Below, piece by piece: positions 6,434-10,797 of a stretch of DNA of 32,000 nucleotides (position 1 is its first letter; each line of letters opens with the position of its first letter). Location: contig NW_008806277.1 of assembly GCF_000400465.1 (NCBI RefSeq), positions 360,001 through 392,000 of the forward strand, read 5' to 3'. A program made the translations under genes and the position numbers. The notes beneath the pieces were generated by a model. The model was not told where the DNA came from, did not search any database, and saw only the letters and a program-made list of their open reading frames with translations. The DNA is from Wallemia ichthyophaga EXF-994 (Eukaryota > Fungi > Basidiomycota).

Positions 6434-8091
6434 ATGTCTACTCATTTTCACTGCAAAATTCCGTAAGCTGGGCTTGTACATAACTTGTGTGTTATGTACT
6501 CCCCATACAAGCTATCTCACCTTGTTGCAGTCACTCAAAACTCGCTAAAGTCACCCTATTCGACGGCAAAGCACAGGTTCACAGGGAATTTAAACCGCAC
6601 ACGCGCATTTACGCAGACACTCTCTACACTCTCAAGCTCTCCAGCCTCCCTGAAACTCTCGACGCTGAGTCTCTGCATGTCAGCGTAGGTGGCCACGAAA
6701 TCCAGGTACTTCAACAGGACCAATCGGAAGACAGAGAAGAAAGCGAGACAACGTTAAATATAAGAGACATCGCAAGAGAAATAGAAGCCAAAGAGCTAGG
6801 CAAGAGCGTTGTGCACCATCAGATGGAAACGTTGCGCAGTTTTGGGCAGAAACCGGCGTCGACGGATGATTTGGACAAGTATCTATCGATGGTGTACACG
6901 AAAATGAGTCGTTATCATGCACATATCAAACAACTCGAAGATGACATCGCTAGCTCCATCGACCACAAGCGTGCATTGGAGCAGTCGGCTGGTATATACG
7001 GGAATGGATATGGAGATGGAGTGAGGAAGAGCAAAGTATGCACCCTCTCCTTCAAGCCACTTGCGAATATAGACAAGGTTACATTCACTATCTCGTACTG
7101 CGTCTTCAACGCGAGCTGGCGGAATTTCTACCGCGTCAAAGCAGATAATGCGGCGATTCAAGTTGATTATATTGCGAAAGTATACAATGATACGGGGGAG
7201 AATTGGGAGGATACGACGCTCGTGCTGTCGACATCTACGCCCAATCTCAGCGCCGAGATACCAGAATTGAGACCAATCAACGCGCAAATCAGATCGCCTT
7301 ACGTGATTGGGAAGGAGAGTCTAGCTGCAGAGAATATGGTATACCGTGCTATGCCAGCAATGGTAGCTACGTCTAGTGTACAGAACAACACTATCAGCAC
7401 TGCATTTACAATCAACGGTCTCACAACAATCCTGTCTAACAGTCACGTCCATAAAACTGTCAAAATCGATACAATTTCCCTGCAGGCTGATTTGAATTGG
7501 GTGTTCGTGCCTTCCCTCTCGGATAGAGCTTATCTGGAAGCAGAAGTCACCAATACCACCGACATGCCTCTTTTGGGTGGTGAAGCGCTTATTTTTATGG
7601 ATGGAGAGTTGGTCTCTCGCAGTTACATCCCCGAAGCGCCATCCGCAACTAAATTCCAACTGAGCCTGGGTGTCGATAGGAATATGAAAACGCACAAGAA
7701 ACACAACGTCGATCGCTACAACGGTATTATCAATAAGGGATTACTTGATAGATTCAACACTGACACGAAAATGCAATCTAGATCTATCAGCACAGTGTAC
7801 GAAGTGCACAACATGAGACAACAAATCGATTGTCCACCTGCTCAAGTTGTTATTAGAGATCAGGTGCCTGTCAGTGTCGATGAGCGTGTGCGCGTCCTTT
7901 TAAACACACCAAAGGAGCTGGCGAGAGATAAGGATGACGATAACGATTGCAATATGTCTGAAAATGTTGAGTGGATTGATAAACAGGATGGCTTCTTCAC
8001 CTGGCGCTTCCCTCTTGAAAACACTTACGTACACGACGTGTGTCTGGATTATGAAATACAATGGCCTGCTAATGAAGAATTGGAGGTTTAA
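6434..8091 (+). CDS. DUF4140 (N-terminal) / DUF4139 (C-terminal) protein (MuiA/TIGR02231-like), about 529 aa, function unknown
   Basis: Exons 6434-6462 and 6531-8091 (GTAAGC...TTGCAG intron). N-terminal VTLFDGKAQVHR...LPETLDAESLHV, a coiled coil, then ISYCVFNASW..FY, NDTGENWEDTTLVLST and FQLSLGVD, which fit the family pattern as I recall it. Confidence 0.8.
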
Positions 8092-8152: not shown

Positions 8153-8634
8153 TTAGTGGTGAAGTTCGTCAAGGGGAGCGCCTTGGTAGTCTAGTTTGTA
8201 GACAACGCCAGATTCAGGACAGCGGCCGATACCGTCGTTCTTAGTGATGTCAAGGGTGAGCCAGACGGTGTCATTCGAGTCAGCGGGGACTGTAGGTGGC
8301 GTGAGTAGGGTGAAATATTTCACAAGCCAAACTAACATCCAGTAGAGCCAACAATGCGAATTGGAGTGAGAGAAGGAACCATGATTGGGTCTTTCATAGT
8401 ACCCATTCTATCAACCACTAAAGGAGACATATCGAACATTTCATTGCCTTGAGCTTTGGTCAATAATTCAATTCTCTCAATTCCAGTTGCTTGGGCTTCA
8501 TCCGTAGGCACAGTACCAGATTCAGCGCCTGGACCGTAAACAGAAGGTGGCTGAGCAGAGTAAAAGCGTGAAGCCAATTGAGTACGTGGAGCGCGTTGAA
8601 TAGCTGGGAATGACTTTGAGAATATTCTGAGCAT
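8153..8634 (-). CDS. COX4: Cytochrome c oxidase subunit Cox4 (COX5B family), about 144 aa, with a degenerate zinc site
   Basis: Exons 8634-8337 and 8289-8153. Mitochondrial presequence MLRIFSKSFPAIQRAPRTQLASRFYS, then GTVPTD..QATGIERIELL, GTMKDPIMVPS and RIVGSTGFPADSNDTVW...RCPESGVVYKL. Confidence 0.93.
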
Positions 8635-8706
8635 TTTATTTAGATTTTGGTTGTCGGCGTTGAACCTTGGAAAGAGGGAAATATTTTATTATTCAAGACG
8701 GCCATC

Positions 8707-10797
8707 ATGGGACAGACAATTTCATCTGCTTTATCTGGTGGTATTTCATCAAATAAGAGAGCTAGAGACGAGGATTCCAATGATACTTTTCCCAGCTCAA
8801 ACGACTCAAAGAGAGTTAAAGTGGACGATGACGGCGACGACGATAGCAATGGAGCAGTAGATAACGTGAATTATAAGGCTGATAAAGATGACAAGGAAGA
8901 CGGCGAAATTTCTGAGTCTGAGGATGCTAAGCCTGTTAATATATTACAAGAACGATTAGATAAATTGAAATGGCAGTCAAAGCAAGCTTCACAGCATTCA
9001 GTTGGACATAATCCACAGGTGCAGTTGGGCGTACAGGTAGGGGCAGACGCAGGGGCACAGGCAGTAGCACAACCACAACCATATGTACAGCCACAGCCAC
9101 TTCCAAATCCTCAACACCTCCCACACTCTCACTCTCACTCTACGAGATATCCTTACAATACCAATCTCCCTAATGTACCTTTCAGTGAGTTTTTACCGTG
9201 TAAATTGGCCACTCTAATCCAATTTCAGCAAATTACGACGTAGAACTGGTTAAAAGTGGTCTAATTAATGGCTTGTCTTTTGAATTTCTACAACAAGAAG
9301 GCGTTGATATCAATTTACTCAACTACTCTGCATCTTTGATCCATTCAACCCCTTCAAACACCCTAGAAGCAGGCCAAAGCACGCGTAAACCTCCAAAGAA
9401 AGGTGTAAATTTGGAAATATTCAACCAGAACAAGCAACTCTTCCAAAGAGATCCAAAGACCCTTACGAAAGCTGAGAGGAAGGAGAGAAAGAGAATTGCA
9501 AGGTTAACAAAGAACAAAGTAAAAGACGAGAGCGACAAGAGGAAGAATAAAAGGCAAACTCAGGCAAAACCATCGACTTCAAAATCATCAGCTGATGAAT
9601 TTTTGAATAGCCTCGCACTCTCACCTCACAGCCAATCTGCCACATCTGCCACATCTGCCAGCTTAGTTGAACCTCCTTCACAAACGTTTAACGCATCACA
9701 GAAACCGCACAATATACAAACACACACACACTCAAGCAAAACACCATATTTGAGATCTAAACCAACTGAAATAATAATCACCCCAAGTGATGATGATGAT
9801 GATGATGATGATGAGTTTGAGAATGTTGATGACACTTCCAAAAATCTCGACTCAACACGCTCCATGGAAAAGATTCCTGAGTGGGTTGTTGGTAGATTAG
9901 CTCCTATTGCTTCAACTAGCACTCCTACACCTCCACCTCCACCCATGTCTCTATCTCAAAGAGCAGCACAGGGCGATGTTAAAGCTCAAAATGAACTCAA
10001 GAGGAAGGAGAATGAAATATACGAAATGCAATTAAAGATCAAGCAGATGGAAATCAAGAGAGAGAAGCAGAAACTGGAAGCTATGATGATGGGAAGGATG
10101 AAAGGAGGTGTTGGCAGTAGTATCAGTACAAAGAATACATCAAGTAATACTGGGAACAATTTCAACGATGATACCACGATAACTACGAGCACATACACTC
10201 AAGTGGAAAGTTTTGCGCAAGAAAAACTGATTGAGACTAAGAAAACCAAGGAAACCAAGGAAACTATTGAGGTTGAGCGTTTGGGGGGTGCTGAGGATGT
10301 CGTTGAAGAGCCAACTGACGATGCTGGTGACGATACTCTTAATATTAAGAACCTCGAGGATGCCCCAGACGCTCAAGAAGCCTTTGAAATGTCAAGTAGT
10401 TTCCAAGACGGTGGTAATAAACCTGTTTAACTAGCAAATAAGGTCACCTGCTAACATTCAATCAAGATACAGGTACTAATTTTGCATCTACTAACAACGT
10501 AAGTGAATATAGGCTACTAGGGTGAGTTAATAGAGTTGATAGACTGAATTTGAAAGTGTTTTTGAAAAGAATCCATCGCTACTGCAGTATGTGGAGGATT
10601 TTGATGACGATGACTTACGAAAGACGGTACGTTCGCAAAGTAAGATGTTTAGTGAGAGGAGAATGTGTAAGTATGAGTTGCCATTAGGTGGGAAATGTAA
10701 AGATAGAGAGTGAGTCTGTCTTTATCGCCAACCGAAAGCAAAAATTCATAGCGGAACACTTTATAGTTGTAATAATATACATTTACATGAATTATAA
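8707..10797 (+). CDS. Low-complexity nuclear protein with a C-terminal zf-C3H1 (Red1/ZFC3H1-like) zinc finger, about 627 aa
   Basis: Exons 8707-9184, 9229-10410, 10473-10498, 10543-10709 and 10767-10797 stay in frame and end in MCKYELPLGGKCKDRDCNNIHLHEL* (C-x9-C-x4-C-x3-H). The N-terminal part is acidic/basic low complexity with EDGEISE. Internal splice sites are less certain. Confidence 0.65.
9790..9812 (+). repeat. Coding (GAT)n microsatellite encoding a poly-Asp run
   Basis: About 7-8 tandem GAT units in the Red1-like gene (SDDDDDDDDE). Confidence 0.8.

What the first reader, a model, noticed from the sequence alone, without database searches (positions are those of the whole stretch)
8153..8634. 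Cox4 (COX5B) has lost three of its four zinc ligands
Seen: the spliced protein reads RIVG-S-TGFPADS-N-DTVW...R-C-PE-S-GVVYKL, with Ser TCT at 8346-8344, Asn AAT at 8275-8273, Cys TGT at 8221-8219 and Ser TCT at 8212-8210. Established: fungal Cox4 has VG-C-TG.P.DS-H...R-C-.E-C-G, which binds Zn through Cys/His/Cys/Cys, and Cys-ligand substitutions in yeast Cox4 block cytochrome c oxidase assembly. The rest of the protein (presequence, splice sites, flanking residues) looks intact. Three separate conservative replacements argue against sequencing error or decay. Inference: this lineage has a zinc-free Cox4 stabilised by compensatory contacts, and the lone Cys may be redox-active. Any link to zinc economy or hypersaline life is speculation.
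Basis: partly seen in the sequence, partly recalled or inferred. Interest (0 to 1): 0.82.

Follow-up and report, generated by a model that had tools for sequence, protein, structure and literature searches.

The report
Zinc-free Cox4 subunit in Wallemia
The salt-loving fungus Wallemia ichthyophaga encodes a normal-looking, strongly conserved Cox4 (COX5B) subunit of cytochrome c oxidase in which three of the four zinc-holding residues are replaced; similar losses arose independently in Malassezia and two yeasts, so this subunit's structural zinc is probably dispensable.

Summary
The minus-strand gene 8634-8153 (one 47-nt intron) encodes a 144-aa COX5B/Cox4 protein. At the positions of yeast Cox4 C111, H119, C134 and C137 it has Ser97, Asn105, Cys123 and Ser126. 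The window is Wallemia ichthyophaga EXF-994.

- **Not an error:** the identical protein occurs in at least 14 independent assemblies.
- **Conserved in the genus:** the same S-N-C-S set is found in W. hederae, W. mellicola and an AT-rich Wallemia-like metagenome species.
- **Under selection:** dN/dS is 0.05-0.09 with saturated dS, and two of the four sites carry synonymous differences.
- **Not a pseudogene:** it is a functional orthologue and most probably binds no structural zinc.
- **Not unique to Wallemia:** among about 190 fungal Cox4 sequences and 74 metagenome loci nearly all are C-H-C-C. Malassezia sp. CBS 17886 and a second Malassezia species have S-F-C-S, probably acquired separately. 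Two unnamed yeast lineages have C-Q-D-S and C-L-C-S.
- **Shared pattern:** ligand 4 is Ser in all five lineages, and Cys3 is kept in four.

No paper describing this was found. The redox-Cys and hypersaline ideas are unsupported. I could not properly test for a canonical paralogue, and zinc content is untested.

The parts
8153..8634 (-). COX4 (COX5B family) gene of Wallemia ichthyophaga EXF-994, locus J056_003441, protein EOR02879.1, 144 aa
   Evidence: Spliced translation. PF01215 at E 4.7e-39. Exact protein match to EOR02879.1. 0 mismatches to KE007227.1.
8337..8634 (-). Exon 1 (codons 1-99 plus the first base of codon 100). Contains the presequence and Ser97.
   Evidence: tblastn of the spliced protein hits 8634-8338 at 100% identity.
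8560..8634 (-). Probable mitochondrial presequence, residues 1-25 (MLRIFSKSFPAIQRAPRTQLASRFY). It has 4 Arg and 1 Lys and no acidic residue, and R-F-Y|S fits the R-3 processing motif.
   Evidence: Inspection of the translation. The cleavage site is inferred from general knowledge of MPP motifs and was not tested.
8290..8336 (-). Intron, 47 nt, GTTAGT...CTACAG, phase 1. Retention would truncate the protein at ...STGC*.
   Evidence: W. mellicola has an intron at the same position. The unspliced ORF product P0003 is a 100-aa truncation.
8153..8289 (-). Exon 2 (codons 100-144 plus stop). The former zinc-knuckle half, with Asn105, Cys123 and Ser126.
8344..8346 (-). Ser97 codon TCT, at the position of Zn ligand 1 (yeast Cys111)
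   Evidence: The metagenome Wallemia-like species has TCA here, a synonymous change.
8273..8275 (-). Asn105 codon AAT, at the position of Zn ligand 2 (yeast His119)
8219..8221 (-). Cys123 codon TGT, the retained Zn ligand 3 (yeast Cys134)
   Evidence: W. mellicola has TGC here, a synonymous change.
8210..8212 (-). Ser126 codon TCT, at the position of Zn ligand 4 (yeast Cys137)

Best explanation
This is the functional, probably single, Cox4/COX5B orthologue of Wallemia. It is imported into mitochondria through a normal presequence and sits on the matrix face of complex IV as in yeast. Its C-terminal zinc-knuckle module has become zinc-independent. The Zn(Cys3His) centre has been replaced by Ser97, Asn105, Cys123 and Ser126. 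I infer that their hydroxyl and amide groups take over the hydrogen bonds to the knuckle backbone that the thiolates and metal formerly organised, helped by extra hydrophobic packing from Wallemia-specific I92 and V128. The change happened before the sampled Wallemia species diverged and has been held by purifying selection since. Shown here: gene identity, the ligand replacements, their conservation and selection, and independent recurrences in other fungi. Inferred: absence of zinc, the way the fold is stabilised, and assembly into complex IV.
For: Family and fold: PF01215 at 133.5 bits. There is 48-53% identity to solved fungal Cox4 chains. The AlphaFold model has pLDDT 95-97 over residues 80-140, and its best Foldseek matches are S. 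pombe and S. cerevisiae Cox4 (E 2e-12 to 5e-11, TM 0.63-0.68). Ligand loss: Ser, Asn, Cys and Ser align with yeast C111, H119, C134 and C137. The mature protein has only 1 Cys and 2 His, both His at the extreme C-terminus. Residues near the site that could serve as ligands (D103, D106, E125) are equally common in zinc-binding homologues, so no rebuilt site is visible. Reality and selection: the identical protein occurs in at least 14 W. ichthyophaga assemblies. The same S-N-C-S set occurs in W. hederae, in W. mellicola on 23 contigs and in a metagenome species with GC3 of 19%. NG86 dN/dS over the mature domain is 0.05-0.09 with dS 1.4-2.7, and there are synonymous differences at Ser97 and Cys123. 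Overall divergence of Wallemia Cox4 from other basidiomycetes (57-59% identity) equals that among zinc-binding basidiomycete Cox4s, so there is no relaxation. Precedents for viability: Malassezia sp. CBS 17886 and a second Malassezia species carry S-F-C-S, while M. furfur, M. vespertilionis and M. nana are C-H-C-C. Two yeast lineages carry C-Q-D-S and C-L-C-S on 14 and 12 contigs.
Against: No metal measurement exists. AlphaFold confidence is inherited from an alignment of zinc-binding homologues and says nothing about stability without zinc. I could not rigorously exclude a canonical second COX5B gene in Wallemia, because no fungal genome collection was searchable. The profile search returned only S-N-C-S Wallemia proteins, but that list was visibly incomplete: it omitted sequences that were in the query alignment. 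Yeast Cox4 ligand mutants are reported to be defective (Coyne et al. 2007, from memory; the paper is not held), so a zinc-free Cox4 needs compensation that I have not identified convincingly. Expression and splicing were not checked against reads.
Confidence: 0.75

Rival explanations
1. The protein still binds a metal ion through a re-arranged site, for example Cys123 with carboxylates (D103, D106, E125) and/or the C-terminal His-His tail. In that case zinc or another metal is retained with different chemistry.
For: Cys3 is retained in 4 of 5 ligand-poor lineages. A His-rich C-terminal tail (HH or HHH) is kept in Wallemia and is widespread in fungal Cox4. Acidic residues flank the site.
Against: The acidic residues and the His tail are equally present in zinc-binding homologues, where they are not ligands, so nothing new has been recruited. 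Ser and Asn are very poor zinc ligands (general knowledge). The tail is modelled with pLDDT below 50. One lineage (P0061) has also lost Cys3.
Confidence: 0.12
2. The retained Cys123 has acquired a new role as a redox-sensitive or regulatory thiol.
For: Cys123 is conserved across Wallemia with a synonymous TGT/TGC change. The equivalent Cys is kept in both Malassezia S-F-C-S lineages and in the P0120 lineage.
Against: Retention is equally explained by packing of a buried side chain next to the near-invariant Arg122 (96% of C-H-C-C sequences). P0061 replaced it with Asp. There is no partner Cys in the mature protein and no functional data.
Confidence: 0.1
3. This copy is a decaying or non-functional paralogue, and a canonical zinc-binding COX5B elsewhere in the genome does the work.
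For: The absence of a paralogue could not be tested on a genome. Some fungi in the metagenome scan carry several COX5B-like loci (Ga0307515 contigs).
Against: dN/dS is 0.05-0.09 across species pairs with saturated dS, and the C-terminal 45 residues are identical between species whose dS is 1.5. The presequence, splice sites and reading frame are intact in four species. Only S-N-C-S proteins carrying a Wallemia name were returned by two searches.
Confidence: 0.03
4. Sequencing, assembly or gene-model artefact.
For: None found.
Against: The gene sequence is identical in independent assemblies, with a single synonymous variant in two of them. The same residues occur in three further species with different codons and intron structure.
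Confidence: 0.01

Closest known systems
S. cerevisiae and S. pombe Cox4 (mammalian COX5B), the zinc-binding matrix-side subunit of cytochrome c oxidase (PDB 6hu9_d, 8c8q_D, 2odx)
   Same: Same Pfam family, same length and domain order, and 48-53% identity. The predicted fold matches. Conserved motifs are shared (GPGA..GTVPTD, ATG[IL]ER, GTMKDPI, R-I-V-G-x-T-G-x-P-x-D-S, R-C-P-E-x-G-x-V-Y-K-L), as are the presequence and the C-terminal His tail.
   Different: Three of the four zinc ligands are replaced: Cys to Ser, His to Asn, Cys to Ser. The C-x2-C-G knuckle reads C-P-E-S-G. A Zn2+ is seen in yeast Cox4 (PMC8361435; PDB 2odx 'Zn(II)Cox4').
Cox4 of Malassezia sp. CBS 17886 (WFD29360.1) and of an unnamed Malassezia in ENA metagenomes (L027-L031)
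   Same: Ligands 1, 2 and 4 are lost and Cys3 is kept. Ser is at positions 1 and 4.
   Different: Phe instead of Asn at ligand 2. A different subphylum (Ustilaginomycotina against Wallemiomycotina). Close relatives (M. furfur, M. vespertilionis, M. nana) still have C-H-C-C, so these are independent events. The two Malassezia cases use different Ser codon families at ligand 1 (TCC and AGC) and do not group together in a tree built without the ligand columns (2% bootstrap, against 85% for L027 with M. nana).
Zinc-independent ('C-minus') paralogues of bacterial zinc-ribbon ribosomal proteins (L31, L33, L36, S14)
   Same: Recurrent evolutionary loss of the Cys ligands of a small structural zinc-ribbon or knuckle, with the protein still functioning in its complex (PMC5912738; Makarova et al. 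2001 from memory).
   Different: Those are extra paralogues switched on under zinc limitation alongside a zinc-binding copy. Here the only detected copy is zinc-ligand-free, no regulation is known, and the protein is a eukaryotic respiratory-chain subunit.

Membership tests
COX5B / fungal Cox4 (Pfam PF01215) | Sequence match to the family profile above the curated threshold | tested here: met
   133.5 bits against a cut-off of 31, E 4.7e-39, covering profile positions 16-129 of 129.
COX5B / fungal Cox4 (Pfam PF01215) | Fold of solved Cox4/COX5B chains | tested here: met
   The AlphaFold2 model has mean pLDDT 84. Top Foldseek hits are 8c8q_D and 6hu9_d, E 2e-12 to 5e-11, TM 0.63-0.67. Caveat: the model is driven by an alignment of zinc-binding homologues.
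COX5B / fungal Cox4 (Pfam PF01215) | Tetrahedral structural zinc site (Cys-His-Cys-Cys in fungi, Cys4 in animals) | tested here: not met
   Ser97, Asn105, Cys123 and Ser126 sit at the four ligand columns. The same columns are C-H-C-C in 169 sequences. Only the ligands were tested, not metal content.
COX5B / fungal Cox4 (Pfam PF01215) | C-x2-C-G-x2-[FY]-K-L knuckle signature (PROSITE COX5B pattern, recalled from memory) | tested here: not met
   The sequence reads C-P-E-S-G-V-V-Y-K-L, so the second Cys is Ser.
COX5B / fungal Cox4 (Pfam PF01215) | N-terminal mitochondrial targeting presequence | tested here: inconclusive
   Residues 1-25 have 5 basic and no acidic residues and an R-x-Y|S motif (by inspection). 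No predictor or import assay was run.
COX5B / fungal Cox4 (Pfam PF01215) | Orthology: the only COX5B gene of the genome, evolving under constraint | tested here: inconclusive
   Constraint is met, with dN/dS 0.05-0.09. Single-copy status is not proven. Only S-N-C-S Wallemia proteins were returned, no second copy lies in the 32-kb window, and no Wallemia genome could be searched.
COX5B / fungal Cox4 (Pfam PF01215) | Stoichiometric subunit of assembled complex IV, required for its stability | not testable with these tools
   Needs proteomics or cryo-EM of Wallemia complex IV, or complementation of a yeast cox4 deletion.
Zinc-sparing 'C-minus' paralogue systems (bacterial ribosomal-protein type) | A zinc-free copy coexisting with a zinc-binding copy and induced by zinc limitation | tested here: inconclusive
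   No zinc-binding copy was detected in Wallemia, though the search was weak. Regulation is not testable. I treat this as an analogy, not as membership.

The most novel reading that the evidence does not exclude
The structural zinc of Cox4/COX5B, conserved from yeast to mammals and treated as required, is dispensable. It has been discarded at least four or five times in fungi along a constrained, convergent path: ligand 4 always to Ser, ligand 1 usually to Ser, Cys3 usually kept. In this reading the losses are adaptive zinc sparing, or protection of complex IV assembly from metal stress. They would suit lineages from metal-restricted or low-water-activity niches, such as Wallemia in brines and dry foods and Malassezia on skin. 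The niche of the Metschnikowiaceae-related yeast is not known; its contigs come from the same KERN20-1 metagenome series as a Wallemia-like fungus. The retained Cys3 would serve a second, zinc-independent role.
Probability: 0.15. Interest if true: 0.75.

Novelty: new variant of a known kind. Interest (0 to 1): 0.55.

Why it matters
Cox4/COX5B is the only metal-containing subunit of cytochrome c oxidase outside the catalytic core. What its zinc is for has never been settled beyond 'stability'. Natural, selected, zinc-ligand-free versions in several independent fungal lineages are ready-made experiments.

- **Swap experiments:** ligands and neighbouring residues can be exchanged between Wallemia or Malassezia Cox4 and yeast Cox4. 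This would show what makes the zinc dispensable.
- **Physiological cost or benefit:** such swaps can show whether a zinc-free complex IV behaves differently under zinc limitation, oxidative stress or high salt.
- **A eukaryotic parallel:** the case resembles the loss of zinc ribbons in bacterial ribosomal proteins, but in a mitochondrial protein.
- **Annotation:** rules that require the C-x2-C motif will flag these proteins as atypical.

Tried and rejected
1. Sequencing or assembly error is rejected. The gene is identical in 10 examined assemblies apart from one synonymous SNP.

2. Pseudogene or relaxed constraint is rejected by dN/dS of 0.05-0.09 and by normal overall divergence.

3. A second copy in the window is absent by tblastn.

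4. Paralogue search in Wallemia genomes was not possible. The genome collection is bacterial and archaeal only. The profile search returned only 116 of 4285 candidates and missed members of its own query alignment, so its negative result is weak.

I used P0001 and P0299 instead and did not try another route for the Malassezia metagenome protein.

6. A shared origin for the Wallemia and Malassezia losses, by HGT or common ancestry, is rejected. The two belong to different subphyla, canonical Malassezia relatives exist, all Malassezia group at 91% bootstrap, and Wallemia with CBS 17886 groups at 0.4%.

7. I looked for parallel compensatory substitutions shared by Wallemia and Malassezia and found none. 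There are only lineage-specific rare residues: Wallemia T90, I92 and V128.

8. Apparent L-H-C-C, H-H-C-C and S-N-C-C patterns in the metagenome scan were tblastn read-through into introns, where a second HSP shows the canonical Cys at ligand 1. In L062-L065 that position lies in neither HSP, so ligand 1 is simply unread there.

9. Literature: eight searches found no description of a zinc-ligand-free COX5B/Cox4. Coyne et al. 2007 is not held, so details of the yeast ligand mutants rest on my memory.

10. I could not name the P0061 and P0120 organisms. The nearest named Cox4 to P0120 is from Sungouiella (Candida) intermedia at about 65% identity.

Full report
**Observation.** On the minus strand an ATG at 8634 opens exon 1 (8634-8337). 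A 47-nt GT..AG intron (8336-8290) follows, and exon 2 runs from 8289 to the stop at 8155-8153. The spliced product is 144 aa and ends ...PIRIVGSTGFPADSNDTVWLTLDITKNDGIGRCPESGVVYKLDYQGAPLDELHH. The protein matches Pfam COX5B (PF01215) at 133.5 bits, E 4.7e-39. It aligns over its whole mature part with solved S. pombe and S. cerevisiae Cox4 chains (E 1e-30 to 1e-28). Counting along the printed yeast precursor alignment, Ser97, Asn105, Cys123 and Ser126 fall on yeast Cys111, His119, Cys134 and Cys137. As I recall, these are the Zn ligands reported for yeast Cox4 (Coyne et al. 2007). The paper is not held, but the bound Zn2+ in yeast Cox4 is confirmed by PMC8361435 and by PDB 2odx 'Zn(II)Cox4'.

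**Whose gene, and is it real?** The window is Wallemia ichthyophaga EXF-994, scaffold KE007227.1, with 0 mismatches over 4482 bp. The protein is exactly EOR02879.1 / J056_003441.
- The identical protein is encoded on 14 contigs, essentially one per assembly. Ten loci were read, and their gene sequences are identical except for one synonymous C/T at CDS position 201 in two strains.
- W. hederae (P0300) and W. mellicola (P0002, 23 contigs) carry the same S-N-C-S set. So does an AT-rich Wallemia-like species from ENA metagenomes (L007, GC3 19%).
- Intron structure differs between them. W. ichthyophaga has intron 1 only, W. mellicola has introns 1 and 2, and the metagenome species has intron 2 only. 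These are therefore independently evolving genomic copies.

**Selection.** Pairwise Nei-Gojobori estimates over the mature domain (116 codons) give dN 0.10-0.15, dS 1.4-2.7 and dN/dS 0.05-0.09.
- Over the full length dN/dS is 0.13-0.14, because presequences evolve faster.
- Two of the four sites carry synonymous differences between species: Ser97 TCT/TCA and Cys123 TGT/TGC.
- The 45 residues from RIVGSTG to KLDYQG are identical between W. ichthyophaga and the metagenome species despite saturated dS.
- Wallemia Cox4 is no more diverged from other basidiomycete Cox4s (57-59% identity) than those are from each other.

The gene is therefore functional, and the new residues are themselves under constraint.

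**How unusual is it?** A full HMMER scan of 1.84 billion representative proteins gave 667 homologues. I tabulated the best 150 together with proteins from two further searches.
- Among the 190 sequences with a residue at all four columns, 169 are C-H-C-C.
- The deviants collapse to a few lineages:

| Lineage | Ligand pattern |
|---|---|
| Wallemia | S-N-C-S |
| Malassezia sp. CBS 17886 | S-F-C-S |
| P0061, a yeast-like organism from SRA assemblies (intronless gene, 14 contigs) | C-Q-D-S |
| P0120 clade (12 contigs; nearest named Cox4 is Sungouiella intermedia, about 65%) | C-L-C-S |
| One read-derived fragment | C-H-C-G |

- A scan of metagenome contigs gave 74 loci. Nearly all are C-H-C-C once intron read-through is allowed for.
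- That scan also found five contigs (L027-L031, up to 181 kb) from a second Malassezia species with S-F-C-S.
- M. furfur and M. vespertilionis are canonical. M. nana is too, once its missed intron is read.

**Independence of the losses.** Wallemia (Wallemiomycotina) and Malassezia (Ustilaginomycotina) belong to different subphyla.
- I built a neighbour-joining tree from 101 columns, leaving out the four ligand columns. All Malassezia group together at 91% bootstrap.
- The metagenome Malassezia pairs with canonical M. nana at 85%. It pairs with CBS 17886 in only 2% of replicates.
- The two S-F-C-S lineages use different serine codon families at ligand 1 (TCC and AGC). Each is one step from TGC but two steps from the other.

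The identical S-F-C-S state therefore probably arose twice within Malassezia, although a 100-column tree is not decisive. Across the five ligand-poor lineages, position 4 is always Ser (TCT, AGT, AGT, AGT, TCG). Position 1 is Ser in three. Position 2 is N, F, F, Q or L. Cys3 is kept in four.

**Mechanism (inferred).**
- With one Cys and only two His (both in the disordered C-terminal tail), the mature Wallemia protein cannot form a Cys/His zinc site.
- The acidic residues near the site are just as frequent in zinc-binding homologues, so no replacement site has been recruited.
- The most likely state is a metal-free knuckle. Ser and Asn side chains would keep the hydrogen bonds to the backbone amides of the two turns, and added hydrophobic residues would help the packing. 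I92 is found in 1% of C-H-C-C sequences and V128 in 0%.
- The AlphaFold model is confident (pLDDT 95-97 over residues 80-140) and superposes on fungal Cox4. That confidence comes from zinc-binding homologues in the alignment and does not prove stability.
- The presequence looks normal by inspection: five basic residues, no acidic ones, and an R-F-Y|S motif.

**Rivals.**
- An alternative metal site (Cys123 with carboxylates or the His tail) is possible but has no specific support.
- A redox role for Cys123 is pure conjecture. Its retention is as easily explained by burial next to the near-invariant Arg122.
- A hidden canonical paralogue is unlikely given the selection data, but I could not exclude it on a genome. 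Only S-N-C-S Wallemia proteins were returned, and one search was incomplete.
- An artefact is excluded.

**Comparison with what is known, and novelty.** This is a bona fide COX5B/Cox4 by sequence, fold and constraint, but it fails the family's hallmark zinc site and C-x2-C signature.
- The nearest analogous phenomenon is the recurrent disruption of zinc ribbons in bacterial ribosomal proteins, whose zinc-independent paralogues are used under zinc limitation (PMC5912738). Here, though, the zinc-free form appears to be the only copy, in a eukaryotic respiratory complex.
- Eight full-text searches found no report of a zinc-ligand-free Cox4/COX5B in Wallemia, Malassezia or elsewhere. The library lacks most subscription journals, so this is absence of evidence only.
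- I rate it a new variant of a known kind and of moderate interest. Given yeast mutant data it would surprise a cytochrome oxidase specialist, and it is directly testable by metal analysis and yeast complementation.
- The link to hypersaline life is not supported. The same loss occurs in skin commensals and in a yeast related to Metschnikowiaceae.

Noticed in passing
window 6487-8091 (+) and upstream; loci L015-L024: The gene convergent with COX4 encodes DUF4140/DUF4139. In the public annotations it is modelled as a 638-750 aa protein that also carries thiamine pyrophosphokinase domains (TPK_catalytic, TPK_B1_binding). This is either a real fusion or two merged gene models.
   Followed up: no
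P0015 / P0160 (Saitoella): The Saitoella complicata Cox4 model reads RCFDGSVYKL where S. coloradoensis has RCFECGSVYKL. That is a loss equivalent to one codon, and it removes ligand 4. It could be an assembly error or a further natural ligand loss.
   Followed up: no
L099 1501-2100 (Malassezia nana CP119892.1): The annotated M. nana Cox4 (P0276, 116 aa) is truncated because an intron was read through. The downstream exons encode a canonical ...VIGCTGYPADSH...RCPHCGS... C-terminus.
   Followed up: yes
window 8290-8336; L001 3317-3364 and 3452-3496; L007 about 1800-1860: Intron gain and loss within the genus: W. ichthyophaga has only the first COX4 intron, W. mellicola has two, and the AT-rich metagenome species has only the second.
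   Followed up: partly
L007-L008 and L009, L011 (ENA 'KERN20-1' metagenomes): The Wallemia-like S-N-C-S fungus and the C-L-C-S yeast (P0120 clade) both come from samples of the same KERN20-1 metagenome series. A shared habitat for two ligand-poor Cox4 lineages may be coincidence.
   Followed up: no
L067, L073, L086, L088-L095, L097, L098 (metagenome Ga0307515): One JGI metagenome holds a dozen distinct COX5B-like loci. Two look degenerate: L090 with C-H-C-Y and L098 with stops. This suggests many fungi, or a paralogue or pseudogene expansion in one genome.
   Followed up: no
window 8153-8161 (C-terminal His-His) and homologues: A short His-rich C-terminal tail (HH, HHH or H-x-HH) recurs in fungal Cox4 from Saccharomyces to Wallemia, including the zinc-ligand-free forms. 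Its role is unknown to me.
   Followed up: no
window 8647-10430 (+): The divergently transcribed upstream ORFs (198 and 385 aa, one containing MGQTISS...) have no Pfam match. The annotated product is 552-559 aa and also has no domain hit.
   Followed up: no
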